NCBI GenBank assembly: GCA_977017575.1
Contig: CDRNVI010000004.1
Coordinates: 656,106 to 720,105 of the forward strand
DNA length: 64,000 nucleotides
DNA from: Paramoeba atlantica
Taxonomy: Eukaryota; Protista; Discosea
Direction: 5' to 3'
Shown here: piece by piece, positions 19,824 through 42,017 of the stretch
Numbering within the stretch: the stretch's first letter is position 1
Layout: every line of letters begins with the position of its first letter
The notes under the pieces: model-generated
Databases searched by the model: none
What the model saw: the letters and a program-made list of their open reading frames with translations, nothing else
Told to the model about the DNA's origin: nothing
Program-made: the position numbers and the translations under genes

Positions 19824-20510
19824 GGGTAATGCCCACTTACAATAAGTATATTGCACCCACTTTTCTATTTTGGGTCAAACTGTGCCACAGAGTTGAAATG
19901 GACAACATAGCCTAAAAAGCTACTGGATCACACGCCCGGTCACACAACATAGGAAAACAAGTACATAATTCTGCGGAAGGGACAAACGTTGGTTCTTAGT
20001 ACGCGCCCCCGCTCGCTTCTGTGTGCAGGGAAGCTAAAATATAATTCTGTACCAGGGCTACGCCCACAGTTGGGCTTTGCTCACAGACGTGGGCTACGCT
20101 CAAAGTTGGGCCTTACCTCCAGACAGGTAAACTAGGAGTCTTCTCAATATTTCCCACATCCCTAACATGGGGCAGCATGGTCCAACATGGGAGGACACTC
20201 ACCTCCTAGCAGGAGGCGGGACCTCCTAGCGGTCTTCCCCTCCACTGCCATGTGGCACTGACGCCAAGCTTTTTTTTGTGACATTTTATCTGTCCATTGG
20301 CAGTTTATCTGCCCACAAGCATTTTATCTGTGCATGGGCATTTGACGTGTAAAGTGGCCAACTTTAAGCGTACTGCAACATTTTTTTAACGTAAAGTAGG
20401 CGGATGGAGGAAGTGAGATAAAGTGTGTGAAGTTACACTGCGCAAGAAAACATTACAATGCATTCATATCATTATTTTGAAAGTGGGTGCAATATAAGTG
20501 GTCTGTACCC
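19824..20510. mobile_element. Merlin-type MITE, copy 1 (sister of 36395-37083)
   Basis: TIRs GGGTAATGCCCACTTA...TATTGCACCCACTTT and AAAGTGGGTGCAATATAAGTGGTCTGTACCC; internal sequence closely matches the 36.4-kb copy; A-rich imperfect TSD. Confidence 0.85.
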
Positions 20511-28955: not shown

Positions 28956-29372
28956 TTTATTTAGCTTCTTCTTTTTGTTGCGTATACAACAGTGCCTTGA
29001 CGGGTGCTCTCACCCAGCAAGACTAAACGATATTTTCGAAAAAGAGCACAACGGGTGGGAAGAGTATTGTGAGACAATTTACTTTTCAAACCCAATTTTC
29101 GGTGGTCTTTAGTGAAGAAATATTTTACGTATACGGGGTGATGAGGTATTACGCGGCTTATCCTGCAGGGTGACTTCTCCTCTTTTTCTACCTGTAAATT
29201 TTCTGCCTTTCTGGCAAGCGAAGTGAGGGGTGTGACGGCATCCGTATTTTTGTCAGGTTCTTATTTTTAGATCGTTTGGATACTCTCCAATACTCAGTAA
29301 GTTTTTCAAATATTCACGCTACTGCTGCGCATTTTGCGTTGAAAACTACCTCGAAATGAAAATCTAGTTGAA

Positions 29373-31365
29373 ACAACGAAACGCCAATATACCGCTCCTA
29401 GAGGACCAGGATATCGTGGCCTGCGTTACTTGGATAGCTACAGCTGTGCTGCGAAACTCCCGAGACGCTCAGCTAAGGGACGTCTTAACCAGCTCCACTC
29501 TGATCTTGCTGCGCAAGGAGGGCCCTTCCGTAGAAGGATCCCCAGCCTGCCGACCTATAGCAATGGGGGAAATCTTTCTTAAATTGGCTAGCCAAATCGC
29601 CATGGACAGGGTAGCAGAAGCAACGGGCAGACTTTTCCAAGATACACAATTTGGTGTTGGAACAAGAAACGGAGGACCTAAAATAATATTAAGGGCAAGA
29701 AACGCGTTTCGTCAAAAAGCGGACTTTGTGCTCTTGACAGTAGGCATCCGTAACGCCTTCAATTCAATTGAAAGAAGCGCGGTGTTTCAGTGTCTAAGGA
29801 GAAATGATGAATTTCACGAGCTATACGGGGTGACCTCATATGTATATCGGGCTCCAACTACGATATTTAACTCGTCGTGTTCGCCGAATAAGGTTCTGAG
29901 GGGAGTCCGACAAGGCGACCCATTAGGACCGTTACTGTTTTCTCTCGGCTTGCACCAAATTCTTGGAAAATTAAAGGATGAGTTCAGTGATCTGACGCTT
30001 TGGGCTTACCTAGACGACCTTTGAATCATCGGCCCGGCAGAACGTGTCGCACAGGCGTTTGGCGCTCTCTGTGATCACGCTTCGGGAATAGGACTGGAGG
30101 TACATCCGGCCAAATGTAAGCTTTCGACGCATTTCAATGACCAGTACGCTCCTTTCAGAGGTATGAACATAGAGCATGCGGAGCAAGGACAAAAGCTCCT
30201 AGGTGCATTCGTCTCCAAGGAAGGCGCGGATGAAACCAGATGGGTAGTCAACCAAATGCCTAAATTGCAGACATTCCTGGATCGGCTGCAACATCTCTCG
30301 TTACAAAGTGCTTACATTTTGCTGAAGAGATGTGGAGTCCCCCGGTGGGACTACCTAATGCGGTGTCATGAGCCGGAGGTAACGGCAAAAGCCAACGTGT
30401 TAGCGGACAAGGCCATACAGGAGTGTGCCTCAGAGCTGCTAGGAGGCTTCGAAGACCTGGAAAAGAACCCGTTTCACAGTACTCTCATGACGGGCGACCC
30501 TTTGGGGGCGAAACCTTTTGCGCAGCAAGCGGCAACTCTGTATTCTCGCACAAAAGCTGAGGTATTAGGGTGTATGGAAAGACGACGTTCTGCCTTGACA
30601 AGATATGAAGAGTCGAAGTCAGCAGTGCGTAAAGAAACCAGCGAACTACATGACGTCCATTCACTTCAGTTGATGGACAAGAGAACGCGCAATTGGACAG
30701 AGGCGCGTAGGAATCGGGGTGAGTACTTCATGCGCGACGCAGAATGGCAAACAGCCATGCGCATGCGATACTTGATAGCACCTACTTCGGACCCTTTCGC
30801 ACAATGTGAGTGCGGAGACATCCTCTCAAACAAAGATTTTGTTGTGCACGCCCTTGACTGCAATAAAGTCAAAGGCGACACTGCGGCCACTCGCCACAAA
30901 CTTGTTAAGAATGCCTTCGTGCACTTGCTACGACAGTACGGATTCACTCCTGACAATCATGAACCCCGATTCTCTGCTGGTCAGGGCCCCGACGTCTGCT
31001 TTATGCTGGGAGGGAAGATATGTCTGGTGGACGTGACCGTCGTTAACCCCCTCGCCCCTTCTTATGTTAAGGCCGAATGGGTAGCGCCTGGCAACACTCT
31101 AGAAAGGGTGGAAAGCTTGAAAGTAAAAGCGCACAGTGACATGGCCACGAAAAGGGGTATGCATTTCTACCCCCTTGCATTTACCGTTTTTGGTGTGGCA
31201 GGGAAGCGCACCGTACTCCTCCTAAAGGAGATCGCAAGGTATACGTATGACAGGAAAAGTTTCCTGCGTCATGCACTACAAGCCATTAATGTGGCTGTTC
31301 AAAAAGGCAACGCCGCGATACTATCCTCCGCGGTAAAAGAGTGGAGGAAGGCGGGTGTCCGCTAA
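29373..31365 (+). mobile_element. 5'-truncated CRE/SLACS-clade non-LTR retroposon (RT + CCHC + restriction-like endonuclease), one internal stop
   Basis: RPIAMGE, QFGVG, RNAFNSI, GVRQGDPLGPLLF, AYLDD, KLLG; CECG...HALDC zinc knuckle, TRHKLV, GPD...LVDVTV...ESLK RLE motifs; ORFs 29368 and 30163 are in frame, separated only by TGA 30022-30024. Confidence 0.9.
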
Positions 31366-35483: not shown

Positions 35484-36394
35484 TTGTGTTCATTAGTGTA
35501 GACTTTAACGATTATACTTGGACCCACAAAAGTCTCGGGAACTAATTTTAAGTCTGTTCAAGGACTCGTTTGGGCTAAATACGACCGGTGGTGGCTGAAT
35601 GGTTGAAGTTGGGCACTTTTTTTAAACCGATGAGAATGCCACCGGAGAAACACTATCACTAAAGAATATTTTGTAATTTGTAACCTGTAATACCAGTAAT
35701 GAATGTAATGAATATTTTGTAACTTTTCATAAAATATTTTTAAATTTGCAACCAAAGAATAGCATATTGGAAGACAGAGCACTTCGTGATACTCTCCTAA
35801 TATACCGCGTTATCAATGTGTAGCCCCCCCTATAGGTCTTTACTTTGGAAATATTTTACGTGTCACCATTTTTGGACCTAATCATTCCGAATCGGCAAGA
35901 CTTTCGTCCAGCTTTTATTCGTCCTAAAATAGATTTCTTTACAACAAGTGGTAATGTGACTTCCGCCATGAAGCGAATCACTGCATTATACCAAACGCGT
36001 TACTTAATATCAAAGTTTCTATTTATTTTCTACAACCACGTATTCAAAAAAAATGAACACGAGTATTCCGTTGAAGGCTGCAAAGGTGCGAGGGAACTTG
36101 CCGCCTCCAGAATATCAACTTGCGCATCTCATTGAAAACCTCATCGTGGAACGTCATCGGCCCTCATGGAGTATAGACAATCCCGGATGTAAATGGAGTG
36201 GAATCACATGCGATGAGGAAAGCCATGTTATTGGAATCAATTGGAATCTATTCCGCCTTTCAGGAAGTCTTCAGTGGGAATTTCTTCCTCATACTGTGGT
36301 TACTTTAAATCTCAATAGCAATAAACTCGAAGGAAAGGTGCCTTTTACGGAGCTGCCACCGAAACTTTTTAATACCTGCATGGGTAATAATTTT

Positions 36395-37083
36395 GGGTAA
36401 TGCCCACTTATATTGCACCCACTTTTCTATTTTTTGGGTCAAACTGTGCCACAGAGTTGAAATGGACAGCATATCCTAAAAAGCTACTGGATCACACGCC
36501 CGGTCACACAACATAGGAAAACAAGTACACAAGCCTGCGGAAGGGACAAACGTTGGTTCTTAGTACGCGCCCCCGCTCGCTTCTGTGTGCAGGGGAGCTA
36601 AAATATAATTCTGTCTCAGGGCTACGCCCACAGTTGGGCTTTGCTCACAGACGTGGGCTACGCTCAAAGTTGGGCCTTACCTCCAGACAGGTAATATAAA
36701 TAGGTAATATAACAGGTAATATAACAGGTAATATAATATAAATAACTAGGAGTCTTCTCAATATTTCCCGCAGCCCTAACATGGTCCAACATGGGACCTC
36801 CTAGCGGTCTTCCCCGCCTGTCGTGTGGCACTGACGCCAAGCTTTTTTTTGTGGCATTTTATCTGTCCATTGGCAGTTTATCTGCCCACAAGCATTTTAT
36901 CTGTGCATGGGCATTTGACGTGTAAAGTGGCCAACTTTAAGCATACTGCAATATTTTTTTGACGTAAAGTAGGCGGAAGGAGGAAGTGAGATAAAGTGTG
37001 TAAAGTTAAGCTGCGCAAGAAAACATTACAATGCATTCATAGCATTATTTTGAAAGTGGGTGCAATATAAGTGGTCTGTACCC
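36395..37083. mobile_element. Merlin-type MITE, 689 bp, ~31-bp TIRs, 8-bp TSD ATAATTTT
   Basis: ATAATTTT at 36387-36394 and 37084-37091; the paralog has a single copy of this site. Confidence 0.92.
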
Positions 37084-37351
37084 ATAATTTTTTTCGAGGT
37101 GAGGCTGACTTTACTGCGCTTCCAGACACTATGACCTATATGGTCTTAAGTAACAACAATTTTTCCTGGGTGATCTGTCTCACCAAGTTGCCTCAAAATC
37201 TTTCTCCACTTTACTTGATAAACAATCAATTCAGTGGACCGCTAGATTTCACAAGCCTGCCCTCCTCATTGAGTTCACTTTTTCTAAGTAATAATCGGTT
37301 TCGTGGTCATGTGAGCTTGAGTTCTCTTCCCAAACGAATGAATCACCTGAG

Positions 37352-37379
37352 ATAAAGATACAGTTTCTGTACCTTGTTG
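37352..37379 (+). ncRNA. Spliced-leader exon-like sequence (3' 28 nt) followed by GT
   Basis: ATAAAGATACAGTTTCTGTACCTTGTTG|GTAC contains the conserved euglenozoan SL core ACAGTTTCTGTAC and the TTG/GT exon end. Confidence 0.75.
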
Positions 37380-37943
37380 GTACTTTTTCCTTAGTTAATC
37401 CTTTCTTTCCCCGGCAACGGGCATACTCTTACTGTATTTTTATGCCCGTTGCCGGCCGGCACTAAGGTCGGAACTGTCCCTCTTGTCGCTGAAGCAGGGG
37501 ACGCGCTTTCACCCCTTCACCCCTCCCCGACTCACTCCCCTGGAGTGAGTGTGCTTCCCCCTCTCGGCTTTTTTCGACTTGTCTTTTTCCTCTCCGAGAG
37601 GGCCATGCGTCACGGTGGCCTCCCTTGAGGACCACTAGACGTGTCCTCCGCCGACGAGACTCGGTTCTCTGCACCTGGCGGTCGCCCAGCTCTCCGCACC
37701 TCGGCTCTGTCGCAGCTCTCTGCACCCGGATTGCCCCCGAAACTGTAATATGGGGATTACGCATCCGGCTCTCTGCACCTGCACATGACAACCGAGCTCT
37801 CTGCACCTGGGACCCCAGCTCTCCGCACCCGCACACCTCCGGCGAGGACGAAACCTCACATGATCCACCCGTCGTATGCGGGATAAGGACATGGTGAGTA
37901 AATCTCTGCACTATAAGTGCATGATAAAACAACAAAACAACAA
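37352..37943 (+). mobile_element. 592-bp SL-headed, A/AAC-tailed non-coding retroposon-like insert
   Basis: Junctions defined by the intact paralog (CACCTGAG|TT|TGGATGG); 2-bp target deletion, no TSD; tail AAAACAACAAAACAACAA; internal hairpins and CTCT(C/G/T)GCACC repeats. Confidence 0.7.
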
Positions 37944-40027
37944 TGGATGGTAACCCGTTTCTGTACATCAATGACAGATCATTCAAAGACAAAGCTTTTC
38001 GAGTTCCGAATAGAAATGTAATGGATCTTGTGAAGAAAGTAGTCTTGTGACTATTGTTGCATTTACAATCAGTTGTATGTGGGGTTTTGCTTCCCGGCAA
38101 CGCATTGTACACCGTAATCTACTAGTATATGGCAGCGTATGACACAAAGTTAAGAAGAATGACGTATAGAAATTAATTCTCTTTTTAAGGGTCTTCGTTA
38201 AACGCGGTAGTTGAGGGGCTGCGGGTACTTCGACCGAGACCGCGGTTTGTATTTTCGGTGGGAAAAGATACAAAACTGGCAAAAGTTTACATTTGTTTAT
38301 TATTTTTATGTGAAATTTCCGATTCGGTGTACGCTTCTAGCTATATTTTTCTTTGTTTCTTTCTCTGAATCAATTTATTCCTTTTTACTAACAACAGTAC
38401 ATTCTTCTTTTCCCGTAAACTTTTCTCCTAAATGTTTATGTCTACCGAGAGCAATGACGCATTGCAAGAGCGATTGACTGCTCTTGGGCCGGCTTACACC
38501 TCTTGGATGAGCCGTGTTGACGTACAATTCGTCAACGCAGCGTGTTGGTAACAGCACGTTGGTGCCACCTTGGACAAGCGGAAACTGGTAGAGGAAGTCG
38601 GCCTCGGAACTTCCAAATCTGTCTGTGAAGGGTCTGACTTGCCAGTGACCATCTGGAGCAATCCGGAATGATTCGGATTTTTTGGCTCTTGGGCCTGAGA
38701 CAAGTGCCGAAGACAAACTCTTCGACGTCATCAAGGCTTCGACAGCCCGGGTCTTTACAAAGGCCCGACGTTTTCTCCGAGCCACGTTTGGAGATAAGCA
38801 ATGCGGAGCTCAGTAGTAAAGTTGAAATCGCAGGGCGCGTTTCATGCACGATGGACAACTTCCTACATGTTGCGCGCTCTGTGTGTGGCATTGAATTGAC
38901 CTCATGCATCGTGACTCGCGTCCTGTTCCATTTGGTTGACCTCCGGGGCCATCTGCTTCTGAGCGTCCGCCCCCGGAGCGCGTGCTTCCTTGGAGAGGCA
39001 GCTGCCGACCTTGAAGCGTACCTTCAAGACATGGACTAAATGTTCGGGTAACCAGATGGTTTGGCCTCAGGAGAAAGGCTCTCAGAGGACGTTTTTGGCT
39101 CGCAGTGGCTGGCAGCATTTGGTACTGGCTGGCAGCGTTTGGCACTGGCTCGCAGTGGCGGTCTGCATGGGTTCCATTGTCATTCTTTATTATTGTCAAA
39201 TCACGTTATTATCGTCATTTTATTATTATTTCATCGGTGATTTTGGGGCAGTTTTTTGATTTACTCCAGCATGTCGTCGATCACCGATTCGGAGGACATT
39301 CATATTCCAGATTGTTCGGAAAACCTTTTTCTTCTTCAACTCGAACGATTTCGCGTAGAAAAGAGTGAGTTTGGTACTGGTGTTGTTGCGCATGACGATG
39401 CTTTGGCCTTTTCTTCGGACGGAGAGTCTCTTACTGATGAAATAGATTCTACTTCCTCCAGCGAGGGTAAAGACTATAAATTTATTTCCCTTACTGAAGG
39501 CCCGCCGGATGCCAACTTGACGAAAGAAAGGAAGGAATTAGCTTGCCAACGAAGCTTGCTGAAAATATTGAAATCATCAAAACCAAAACTTTCTTCTGAA
39601 AAAAAGCAATTTAAAATGACAGACTTTATAAAATTCCGACAGCCTTAGATCTCTATGCCTATGCTTGCTAAAGCCTTATTAATTCATTCTTAATCGAGAA
39701 AAAAAAGATTCTGGGCTTTTCTGAATTCGAAACTGCTTTCCCCATTGATCATTGATCCTGTGCTTTCTAGGTTTTACTTAAAAATACTTTAAAAATGGTG
39801 GGCTTCCTCTACTTTTGACAATAATATGATGCAAAGCTTCCTATTATTTCCAAATCACGTTAATATTGCCAAATCATCATATTATTGTCAAAACTTTTGA
39901 CAATAATAACTGTACCCCGGGTACAGTAATGTGGCTTCCGCCATGAAGCGAATCACTGCATTATACCGAACGCGTTACTTAATATCAAAGTTTCTATTTA
40001 TTTTCTACAACCACGTATTCGAGAAAA

Positions 40028-41306: not shown

Positions 41307-42017
41307 ATGAACACGAGCATTCCGTTGAAGGCTGCAAAGGTGCGAGGGAACTTGCCGCCTCCAGAATATCAACTTGCGCATCTCATTGAAAACCTCATCG
41401 TGGAACTTCATCGGCCCTCATGGAGTATAGACAATCCCGGATGTAAATGGAGTGGAATCACATGCGATGAGGAAGGCCATGTCATTGGAATCAAATGGTA
41501 TCGATTCCGCCTTTCAGGAAGTCTTCAGTGGGAATTTCTTCCTCATACTGTGGTTACATTAAATCTTAATAGCAATGAAATGAAAAGTAAAGTACCTTTT
41601 ACGGAGCTGCCACCGAAACTTTTTAATACCTGCATGGACAATAATTTTTTTCGAGGTAAGGCTGACTTCACTGCGCTTCCAGACACTATGACCTATATGG
41701 TCTTAAGCAACAACAATTTTTCCGGAGAGATCTGTCTCACCAAGTTGCCTCAAAATCTTTCTTCACTTAACTTGATAAACAATCAATTCAGTGGACCGCT
41801 AGATTTAACAAACCTGCCCTCCTCATTGAGTTCACTTTTTCTAAGTAGTAATCGGTTTCGTGGTCATGTGAGCTTGAGTTCTCTTCCCAAACGAATGAAT
41901 CACCTGAGTTTGGATGGTAACCCGTTTCTATACATCAATGACAGATCATTCAAGGACAAAGCTTTTCGAGTTCCGAGTGGAAATGTAATGGATCTTGTGA
42001 AGAACGTAGTCTTCTGA
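41307..42017 (+). CDS. LRR-family copy 10 (intact type B)
   Basis: In-frame ATG 41307 within ORF 41100-42017; LRRs. Confidence 0.9.
   Translation: MNTSIPLKAAKVRGNLPPPEYQLAHLIENLIVELHRPSWSIDNPGCKWSGITCDEEGHVIGIKWYRFRLSGSLQWEFLPHTVVTLNLNSNEMKSKVPFTELPPKLFNTCMDNNFFRGKADFTALPDTMTYMVLSNNNFSGEICLTKLPQNLSSLNLINNQFSGPLDLTNLPSSLSSLFLSSNRFRGHVSLSSLPKRMNHLSLDGNPFLYINDRSFKDKAFRVPSGNVMDLVKNVVF

What the first reader, a model, noticed from the sequence alone, without database searches (positions are those of the whole stretch)
37352..37966. SL-headed, A-tailed non-coding retroposon inserted next to an SL mimic: candidate non-autonomous partner of SL-targeting retrotransposons
Seen: the intact paralog (41307-42017) fixes the junctions of a 592-bp insert. 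It begins with ATAAAGATACAGTTTCTGTACCTTGTTG|GT (the last 28 nt of an SL-like exon plus the donor GT) and ends in AAAACAACAAAACAACAA. The LRR sequence just downstream carries the SL core GTTTCTGTAC (37957-37966), 13 nt from the junction; in the insert head the same 10-mer lies 11 nt from the start. The intact paralogs read GTTTCTATAC or GTCTCTGTAC here. Established: CRE1/SLACS/CZAR are RLE retroposons that insert about 11 nt into the 39-nt kinetoplastid SL exon and duplicate its 3' part. Inference: this is a short non-autonomous (SINE-like) element that carries the SL target duplication in its RNA and was copied by a CRE-type enzyme into an off-target SL look-alike. I know of no described SL-derived or SL-targeting SINE class. 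An alternative is a retrocopied SL-capped transcript.
Basis: partly seen in the sequence, partly recalled or inferred. Interest (0 to 1): 0.9.

Follow-up and report, generated by a model that had tools for sequence, protein, structure and literature searches.

The report
Spliced-leader-headed retroposon homing to LRR genes
The 592-base insert is a very young copy of a short non-coding jumping element that begins with part of the cell's spliced leader. It is most likely copied by R2-like retrotransposons that land at one fixed spot of leucine-rich-repeat coding sequence, not at spliced-leader look-alikes.

Summary

**What holds**
- The insert (37352-37943) is real. Public read contigs carry the empty allele of this locus, with TT in place of the 592 bp.
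- Its first 28 nt equal nt 11-38 of the genome's true spliced-leader (SL) exon, followed by GTAC.
- It belongs to a young, non-coding family about 580 bp long:
  - at least 40 near-full copies are 94-100% identical, and 64 exact 3' hairpins were found;
  - it has sister subfamilies, a 5'-truncation series, no poly(A) and no target duplication.
- Its 3' two-hairpin module and its target are shared with LINEs in this genome that carry a restriction-like endonuclease (RLE), as R2 elements do.

**What does not hold**
- Targeting of SL mimics fails. The downstream GTTTCTGTAC occurs at 1 of 46 independent sites, and flank scores equal controls.
- No copy sits in an SL exon.
- SINE and LINE copies instead hit one register of LRR coding sequence (LxxL|xLxxNxFxG; P about 7e-12).
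- The partner enzyme was not shown to belong to the CRE clade.

**Still open**
- Where the SL + GTA head came from.
- Why copies of this subfamily start at SL nt 11.

The scan has reported this family several times before, on other DNA of the same genome. I found no description of it in the papers I searched.

The parts
37352..37943 (+). Whole insert: one copy of the ~580-bp non-coding retroposon family (here called SINE-A)
   Evidence: Junctions are fixed by the paralog and by the empty allele in read contigs. At least 40 genomic copies are 94-100% identical.
37352..37379 (+). Head: identical to nt 11-38 of the 38-nt SL exon
   Evidence: SL RNA gene arrays; exact match in the window.
37380..37394 (+). 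GTAC + pyrimidine tract + AG (15 nt). This segment is absent, exactly, from a 'spliced-type' subfamily in which the SL joins TTMATCC directly.
   Evidence: Copies L022, L027, L028, L053 and L055. Nearly all of the 100 listed GTAC[AT]TTTT heads (162 matches in all) follow the SL end TTG.
37369..37383 (+). Hairpin GUACC/GGUAC across the exon/GT boundary. The authentic SL RNA can form the same stem with a G-U pair.
   Evidence: Folds; kept in all 7 subfamily representatives.
37360..37367 (+). SL nt 19-26 (ACAGTTTC), predicted to pair with 37470-37477
   Evidence: Consensus fold A1: 8 pairs kept in 7 of 7 representatives. The only changes are G/A opposite U.
37470..37477 (+). Internal anti-SL 8-mer (GGAACTGT)
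37411..37455 (+). 15-bp hairpin of the 5' domain
   Evidence: two pairs covary among subfamilies.
37666..37828 (+). G+C-rich body with six TCTCYGCAC repeats, which copy the 5' arm of the terminal hairpin motif
   Evidence: seven motifs in all, against about 0.005 expected by chance.
37868..37882 (+). First hairpin of the 3' module (CCCGTCGTATGCGGG)
   Evidence: Folds. The LINE family of L045/L042 has CCCGTTGAATGCGGG at the same place.
37903..37924 (+). Terminal motif TCTCTG-[GCAC/GTGC hairpin]-CATGA
   Evidence: 64 exact genomic matches. LINE L041 ends ATCTCTG-[TAGAA/TTCTA hairpin]-CATGATAAC, and LINE L045 ends ACTCTAC-loop-GTATGA.
37925..37943 (+). Tail: the family's TAAAACA(A) plus an (ACAA)-like extension specific to this copy
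37350..37945 (.). Target junctions: ...CTGAG | insert | TGGATGG. The empty allele reads CTGAG-TT-TGGATGG, so 2 bp were lost and there is no duplication.
36053..38050 (+). Host LRR gene, one of four tandem paralogs. The insert creates an in-frame TAA right at the junction and removes about the last 35 codons.
37957..37966 (+). SL-core 10-mer in the target, encoded by the LRR codons for P-F-L-Y. It was already there before the insertion and is not a general target feature.

Best explanation
The insert is a recent copy of a non-autonomous, non-coding retroposon (SINE-like, about 580 nt). It moves through an RNA copy made by the reverse transcriptase of R2-like LINEs of the same genome, which carry a restriction-like endonuclease (RLE).

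The proposed steps are:
- The LINE protein recognises the element's 3' module: two hairpins, the second framed by TCTCTG...CATGA, then a short A-rich tail.
- It nicks leucine-rich-repeat coding DNA at one fixed register, in the codon between LxxL and xLxxNxFxG.
- It copies the RNA from the nick by target-primed reverse transcription.

This mechanism would account for frequent 5' truncation, no target duplication (here a 2-bp loss) and occasional head-to-tail chimeras.

The SL exon fragment at the 5' end is a hard-wired part of the element. Together with GUAC and an internal anti-SL 8-mer it is predicted to fold into a conserved 5' domain. It is a relic of an SL-bearing ancestral RNA, not a target-site duplication and not a homing device.

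**Shown:** the family, its youth, the empty allele, the shared 3' architecture, and the shared LRR register of SINE and LINE copies.
**Inferred:** the RNA intermediate, mobilisation in trans, which LINE family is the partner, and any function of the 5' domain.
For: **Family and youth**
- At least 40 copies are 94-100% identical; the nearest is 99.7%.
- 5' ends form a truncation series at query positions 1, 2, 3, 5-8, 10-13, 18, 23, 32-35, 45, 105-147, 238 and 398, while the 3' end is constant.
- The empty allele of this locus is present in public read contigs.

**Partner LINEs**
- L045 has an intact 1643-aa frame with three Cys/His motifs, an RT domain, a CCHC knuckle and an RPD...E...K endonuclease motif.
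- For the 98.9% identical copy L042, the best solved relatives are R2 proteins: 8gh6 at E 4e-27 and 8ibw at E 7e-26.
- LINE L041 is 49-52% identical to L045 in protein and keeps the CCHC and RLE motifs.

**Shared 3' module**
- The stems differ between families but stay paired: GCAC/GTGC, TAGAA/TTCTA and AC/GT.
- The terminal hairpin appears in the predicted fold of 5 of 6 ends.

**Shared target**
- The strict LRR motif starts 7-11 nt after CATGA at 12 of 46 independent SINE sites (about 21 by eye). The control rate in the same loci is 1.6%, giving P = 7e-12.
- Three of four independent LINE copies lie at the same register. Two of them lie exactly one LRR unit upstream of a SINE-A copy.

**Other R2-like traits**
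- A 2-bp target loss.
- Tandem element-to-element joints at several of the 46 sites and in read contigs.
Against: - No LINE with exactly SINE-A's terminal hairpin was found, so the partner is assigned by architecture and target only.
- About half of the SINE sites are not in recognisable LRR sequence.
- No RNA data could be obtained, so neither transcription nor the 5' end of the RNA is shown.
- Why full-length SINE-A copies stop at SL nt 11-13, while sister subfamilies reach nt 3-9, is unexplained.
- Only one empty site is known, so 'no target duplication' rests on one locus plus reading-frame reconstruction at the others.
Confidence: 0.78

Rival explanations
1. This is a non-autonomous partner of CRE/SLACS/CZAR-type elements: it carries the SL target duplication in its RNA and was inserted at an off-target SL look-alike.
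For: - The head starts at SL nt 11, near the classical CRE/SLACS insertion point (established knowledge; PMC12278014).
- This copy has an exact SL core 13 nt downstream, while its three uninterrupted paralogs each differ by one base.
- The partner LINEs do carry an RLE.
Against: - The SL core is found downstream at 1 of 46 independent sites. Best-match scores equal controls, and no register shows likeness to SL nt 11-38.
- No SINE or LINE copy sits at nt 10/11 of an SL exon.
- Sister subfamilies have heads reaching SL nt 3-9.
- There is no poly(A) and no duplication.
- No trypanosomatid CRE or SLACS protein is among the 120 listed relatives of the LINE.
Confidence: 0.04
2. This is a plain processed retrocopy of an ordinary trans-spliced cellular transcript, copied by any LINE.
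For: - SL-relic heads are common in this genome. There are 567 sites where the SL end is followed by a non-G base, most reaching SL nt 3, as expected if copying stops at the modified cap.
- Some SINE copies have the SL joined directly at the AG acceptor.
- Tandem SL relics occur in L021 and L045.
Against: - The SL + GTAC junction is hard-wired in nearly all of the 100 listed heads (162 matches), across subfamilies 76-99% alike. No AG|GTAC precursor was found.
- The 3' end is a LINE-type two-hairpin module rather than a polyadenylated mRNA end.
- The element has no ORF, and its targets are specific.
Confidence: 0.05
3. This is an SL-RNA-gene-derived SINE, comparable to tRNA-, 7SL-, 5S- or snRNA-derived SINEs. 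An ancestral element became fused to an SL RNA gene just after intron nt 3. Master copies are transcribed from an SL RNA promoter as capped SL-GUAC-body RNAs, and the dispersed copies are their 5'-ragged retrocopies. Mobilisation by the RLE LINE would be the same as in the best explanation.
For: - The head keeps the first three intron bases (GTA) and the exon/intron hairpin of the SL RNA.
- Sister subfamilies reach SL nt 3, as if the RNA began at nt 1.
- No resident copy has an acceptor that could restore the SL at the same junction.
Against: - Beyond GTA there is no similarity to the SL intron. Local alignment scores lie within shuffles for three subfamilies.
- None of the nine ACG...GGTAC sites has the SL promoter flank.
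- GTA alone would match by chance 1 time in 64.
Confidence: 0.13

Closest known systems
CRE1/CRE2/SLACS/CZAR (CRE clade, trypanosomatid RLE retroposons)
   Same: Both occur in kinetoplastids, the enzyme combines RT with a restriction-like endonuclease, both are site-specific, and SL sequence stands at an element boundary.
   Different: - CRE-clade elements insert in the SL RNA gene exon, end in poly(A) and make duplications (PMC12278014).
- Here the targets are LRR codons, the tail is TAAAACA, 2 bp were lost, and SL exons are untouched.
- No non-autonomous CRE partner is described in the papers I searched.
R2 elements and their non-autonomous derivatives (SIDE-type)
   Same: - A single-ORF RLE LINE with N-terminal Cys/His motifs and a CCHC knuckle.
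- A structured 3' UTR, a sequence-specific target and small target deletions.
- Template-jump-like tandem joints (from memory of the R2 literature).
- Best solved relatives are R2 proteins.
   Different: - The target is a protein-coding repeat family rather than 28S rDNA.
- No HDV-like ribozyme was detected.
- The 5' end is an SL relic.
Stringent LINE/SINE pairs sharing a 3' stem-loop (e.g. eel UnaL2/UnaSINE1; from memory)
   Same: A short non-coding element whose 3' end mimics the partner LINE's terminal stem-loop and short tail repeat.
   Different: - Those SINEs have tRNA-derived heads with pol III promoters, and their partners are APE-type LINEs.
- Here the head is an SL exon fragment and the partner has an RLE.
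RIME/NARTc/SIDER (ingi/L1Tc-dependent elements of trypanosomatids)
   Same: Non-autonomous retroposons of kinetoplastids.
   Different: Those share the Pr77 5' signature, have poly(A) tails and target duplications, and depend on APE-type LINEs (PMC12278014, PMC8190864). None of these features is present here.
Relic-SL retrogenes of dinoflagellates
   Same: DNA copies begin with SL relics. Tandem relics show re-splicing and recycling (PMC6050394, PMC5585692), as seen here in L021 and L045.
   Different: Those are protein-coding retrogenes. They are not a transposon family with its own 3' recognition module and target specificity.

Membership tests
CRE clade system (SL-gene-specific RLE retroposons and a dependent element) | Partner encodes RT plus a restriction-like endonuclease | tested here: met
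   - RT domain found (Pfam).
- CCHC knuckle and RPD...E...K motifs at the C-terminus.
- R2 proteins are the best solved relatives.
CRE clade system (SL-gene-specific RLE retroposons and a dependent element) | Insertion at a fixed position inside the SL RNA gene exon | tested here: not met
   - 39 SL genes read uninterrupted through the exon into GTAT.
- The LINE examined in an SL array lies in the spacer.
- The nine SL+GTAC sites with a longer SL lack the SL promoter flank.
CRE clade system (SL-gene-specific RLE retroposons and a dependent element) | Poly(A) tail and target-site duplication | tested here: not met
   The tail is TAAAACA(A), with a rare ACAA-type extension. The empty allele shows a 2-bp loss and no duplication.
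CRE clade system (SL-gene-specific RLE retroposons and a dependent element) | RT phylogeny places the partner within CRE | tested here: inconclusive
   - The named relatives are fish, amphioxus and sea-urchin proteins, some labelled R2.
- No trypanosomatid CRE or SLACS is among the 120 listed.
- No tree with reference clades was built.
SINE in the strict sense | Short, non-coding, dispersed and dependent on a LINE whose 3' end it shares | tested here: met
   The exact partner family was not pinned down.
SINE in the strict sense | Head derived from a pol III small RNA (tRNA, 7SL, 5S) with an internal promoter | tested here: not met
   There is no Rfam match at gathering or permissive thresholds. 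The head is an SL exon fragment.
R2-like site-specific RLE LINE system | Sequence-specific target shared by the autonomous and dependent elements | tested here: met
   LRR register at 12-21 of 46 SINE sites (P = 7e-12) and at 3 of 4 LINE copies.
R2-like site-specific RLE LINE system | 5' end of the RNA defined by an HDV-like ribozyme | tested here: not met
   No ribozyme family matched, even at E up to 10. A novel ribozyme is not excluded.
R2-like site-specific RLE LINE system | Protein binds the 3' UTR RNA and performs target-primed reverse transcription at the nick | not testable with these tools
   Needs biochemistry.
Relic-SL retrocopies | Genomic SL exon sequence joined to downstream sequence at the exon end, with tandem relics | tested here: met
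   567 sites where the SL end is followed by a non-G base. Tandem relics occur in L021 (SL 27-38 + 23-38) and L045 (SL 21-38 + 29-38).

The most novel reading that the evidence does not exclude
The SL-containing 5' domain is functional rather than a passive relic. The domain comprises the SL exon fragment, a GU donor, an SL-RNA-like hairpin and an anti-SL segment; in the LINEs there is a 14-nt perfect complement of SL nt 6-19. It might define or protect the 5' end of the element's RNA, or engage the SL RNP or trans-splicing machinery. On this reading the system would be an RLE LINE/SINE lineage that has retargeted from a non-coding multicopy gene to a fixed codon register of a protein-coding repeat family, so that it continually inactivates or reshuffles LRR genes.
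Probability: 0.15. Interest if true: 0.85.

Novelty: new variant of a known kind. Interest (0 to 1): 0.62.

Why it matters
Site-specific RLE retrotransposons are known for safe-haven targets such as rDNA, SL genes and microsatellites.

- **An unusual target.** A LINE/SINE system that homes to one nucleotide register of leucine-rich-repeat coding sequence, and is still active (this locus has filled and empty alleles), would be an unusual choice of target. It would be a steady source of gene breakage in a large gene family.
- **An unreported head.** The SL-exon head is a kind of SINE head I did not find described.
- **Wider retrocopying.** With hundreds of other SL-relic retrocopies, it shows that trans-spliced RNAs are routinely copied back into this kinetoplastid-type genome, as in dinoflagellates.
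- **Testable.** The target rule and the 3' RNA module are concrete enough for biochemical tests.

Tried and rejected
- **Known RNA families.** The Rfam scan of the window (gathering thresholds) and of the insert (E up to 10) found no known RNA and no ribozyme.
- **SL intron similarity.** Nothing beyond GTA; scores lie within shuffles.
- **Pre-spliced source.** A search for a source with AG before GTAC found none among the 100 listed of 162 heads.
- **Master in an SL gene.** A search for a full SL + GTAC with the promoter flank found none.
- **SL-mimic test.** Negative at the target sites.
- **LINE with SINE-A's exact hairpin.** The six loci fetched around hairpin variants hold only short elements and no LINE protein.
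- **My own error, corrected.**
  - The GCGCC...GCGTATGA end that I first took for the end of LINE L042, and used as the query, belongs to a second short element lying between the LINE and SINE-A.
  - The true LINE ends are those, so the copies found are SINE-B-type ends.
- **The window's own RT fragment** (29368-31365) is only 19.8% identical to the LRR-homing LINE, so it is not the partner.
- **RNA evidence.** No run on record as RNA holds the stretch, and the one guessed RNA run laid nothing.
Full report
**Observation**

Compared with the intact paralog (41307-42017), the LRR gene is interrupted after ...CACCTGAG by 592 bp (37352-37943). The insert starts ATAAAGATACAGTTTCTGTACCTTGTTG-GTAC and ends ...CATGATAAAACAACAAAACAACAA. 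The gene then resumes at TGGATGGTAACCCGTTTCTGTAC.

Contigs of two public runs of the same organism (X1, X2) join 37351 to 37944 with only TT between them, and have no mismatch over 355 flanking bases. This shows four things:
- The empty allele of this locus, and not merely a paralog, exists.
- The insertion replaced TT.
- There is no target duplication.
- The downstream 10-mer was already in the target before the insertion.

The insert creates an in-frame TAA at the junction and removes about the last 35 codons of the gene.

**The true spliced leader**

SL RNA genes stand in arrays with a unit of about 2.56 kb on contigs C97 and C107, and also on C74, C11 and C3. All read AACTTTAACGATAAAGATACAGTTTCTGTACCTTGTTG followed by GTATGAGAAGC. 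The head of the insert is therefore SL nt 11-38 plus GTA, after which it diverges.

**A family, not a single retrocopy**

- The insert has at least 40 near-full copies at 94-100% identity; the nearest is 99.7%.
- There are 64 exact matches to its terminal hairpin.
- Sister subfamilies are 76-90% identical.
- Across 60 copies (46 independent sites) the 3' end is constant: CATGA plus a tail of 7-10 nt, such as TAAAACA(A) or ACGAACAA.
- The 5' ends form a truncation series, from SL nt 11-13 down to position 398.
- There is no ORF of note and no Rfam match.

This is the anatomy of a LINE-dependent, non-autonomous retroposon.

**The partner**

The genome is full of reverse transcriptase genes, with 1851 first-look candidates. 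Two LINE families stand next to SINE copies.

*L045/L042 type*
- L045 has an intact 1643-aa frame with three CxHxCxNKxxCxHxCCK-like motifs, an RT domain, a CCHC knuckle and an RPD...E...K motif.
- For the 98.9% identical copy L042, the best solved relatives are R2 proteins: 8gh6 at E 4e-27 and 8ibw at E 7e-26.
- No APE domain was detected.

*L041 type*
- It is 49-52% identical to L045 in protein and keeps the CCHC and endonuclease motifs.

*Database relatives*
- The named relatives are fish, amphioxus and sea-urchin proteins, some labelled R2.
- No trypanosomatid CRE or SLACS protein is among the 120 listed.
- I built no tree, so the clade is not named.

**Shared 3' module**

| Element | 3' end |
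|---|---|
| SINE-A | CCCGTCGTATGCGGG, about 20 nt, then ATCTCTG-GCAC-TATAA-GTGC-ATGA-TAAAACA |
| LINE L041 | ATCTCTG-TAGAA-TATT-TTCTA-CATGA-TAAC |
| LINE L045/L042 | CCCGTTGAATGCGGG, about 20 nt, then ACTCT-AC-TGGAAA-GT-ATGA-AAAAATAAAA |

These ends are shown. The stems differ but stay paired, and the terminal hairpin is in the predicted fold of 5 of 6 ends. The body of SINE-A also repeats the motif TCTCYGCAC six more times.

I first mistook the end of a second short element for the end of LINE L042, and used it as the query. Searches corrected this.

**Shared target**

- Of 46 independent SINE-A sites, 12 have the strict motif [LIVMF]xx[NC]x[FLI]x[GS] starting 7-11 nt after CATGA; about 21 qualify by eye.
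- The control rate in the flanks of the same loci is 1.6%, giving a binomial P of 7e-12.
- The junction falls in the codon between LxxL and xLxxN, with losses or gains of only a few bases.
- Sister subfamilies show the same register.
- Three of four independent LINE copies do as well:
  - L041: LPPSIEVV | ISFNNFEG
  - L046: LPPQSNNI |
  - L042/L005/L006: | NNLFTGELDF
- In two genes a LINE lies exactly one LRR unit upstream of a SINE-A copy.

The same target for the autonomous and the dependent elements is the strongest argument that one enzyme moves both.

**The SL-mimic idea fails**

- The SL core occurs downstream at 1 of 46 sites, which is this one. The next best match is 8 of 10 at one site.
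- The mean best match is 5.83 against 5.75 in controls.
- No register shows likeness to SL nt 11-38.
- Here the 10-mer is simply the codons for P-F-L-Y. The three uninterrupted paralogs each differ from it by one base. That is an anecdote of one, not a rule.
- No copy sits in an SL exon.
- The one LINE I examined in an SL array is of another family. It lies about 337 bp after the exon and has a duplication of roughly 12-22 bp.

**What the SL head is**

SL relics are common in this genome. There are 567 sites where the SL exon end is followed by a non-G base. Most heads extend to SL nt 3, as expected if reverse transcription stops at the modified cap. The LINEs carry spliced-type SL relics too. 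Tandem relics in L021 and L045 show that resident copies can be spliced again and copied again.

The SINE head is different:
- SL + GTAC is hard-wired. Nearly all of the 100 listed heads (162 matches in all) follow the SL end TTG, across subfamilies, and no AG|GTAC precursor was found.
- Sister subfamilies reach SL nt 3-9.
- The GUACC/GGUAC hairpin copies a stem that the real SL RNA can form.
- An internal GRRACUGU is predicted to pair with SL nt 19-26 in all seven subfamily representatives.
- Beyond GTA there is no similarity to the SL intron.
- A minor subfamily lacks exactly the 15 nt from GT to AG, as if a resident copy had been trans-spliced at that acceptor.

The head is therefore an inherited SL relic, possibly taken from an unspliced SL RNA or gene. 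It is not a carried target duplication. How the 5' end of the RNA is set is not explained, nor why SINE-A copies stop at nt 11-13.

**Comparison and novelty**

The system works like an R2-type LINE with a dependent short element that mimics its 3' end. It fails the defining tests of the CRE clade (SL-exon target, poly(A), duplication) and of classical SINEs (a pol III head).

In the papers I searched, the transposons reported for trypanosomatids and for Bodo saltans are ingi, CRE/SLACS, VIPER and TATE. I found no SL-headed dependent element and no LRR-homing LINE. Relic-SL retrogenes are described for dinoflagellates.

Earlier follow-ups of this scan reached much the same reading on other copies in this genome. 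I re-tested the main points here. The reading is a new variant of a known kind.

Noticed in passing
window 36395-37083 (a second copy at about window 19825-20499): A second, unrelated insertion splits the same LRR gene. It is a 689-bp element with terminal inverted repeats of about 31 bp (GGGTA...CCACTTATATTGCACCCACTTT) and an 8-bp target duplication (ATAATTTT). This is the look of a non-autonomous DNA transposon. About 10 full-length copies are 83-96% identical in the genome. The mobilome paper I read lists only retrotransposon clades for trypanosomatids.
   Followed up: partly
genome-wide; example L032 (G000:C1:9000-18999): At 567 sites the SL exon end is joined to non-intron sequence, mostly SL|ACTTTTCTTATTTG.... 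These heads reach SL nt 3. Some stand in tandem 5.09-kb units in which the sequence after the SL is also repeated before it.
   Followed up: partly
L042 and L045, LINE 5' UTR just after the SL relic: The LINE 5' UTR holds TATCTTTATCGTTA, a perfect complement of SL nt 6-19, about 12 nt after the SL end. Its function is unknown.
   Followed up: partly
L043 (G000:C74:106500-114500): A 4.7-kb LINE of another family lies in the spacer of an SL RNA gene unit, about 337 bp after the exon. It has a 7-nt SL relic head and a target duplication of roughly 12-22 bp.
   Followed up: partly
L011/L042 (G000:C98), L017/L020, L019, L071, L074; also read contigs joining 37924 to 37354: Head-to-tail chimeras occur in which the 3' tail of one element abuts the (often truncated) SL head of the next, with a few extra bases between. 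This is what end-to-end template jumping by the reverse transcriptase would give.
   Followed up: partly
window 29368-31365: An RT-bearing fragment, noted by another first-stage finding as CRE-clade, is only 19.8% identical to the LRR-homing LINE over the RT. It lacks the SL head and the 3' hairpin motif.
   Followed up: partly
window 37569-37666: Read contigs of three runs skip 96 bp here, so a deletion variant or subfamily of the element exists.
   Followed up: no
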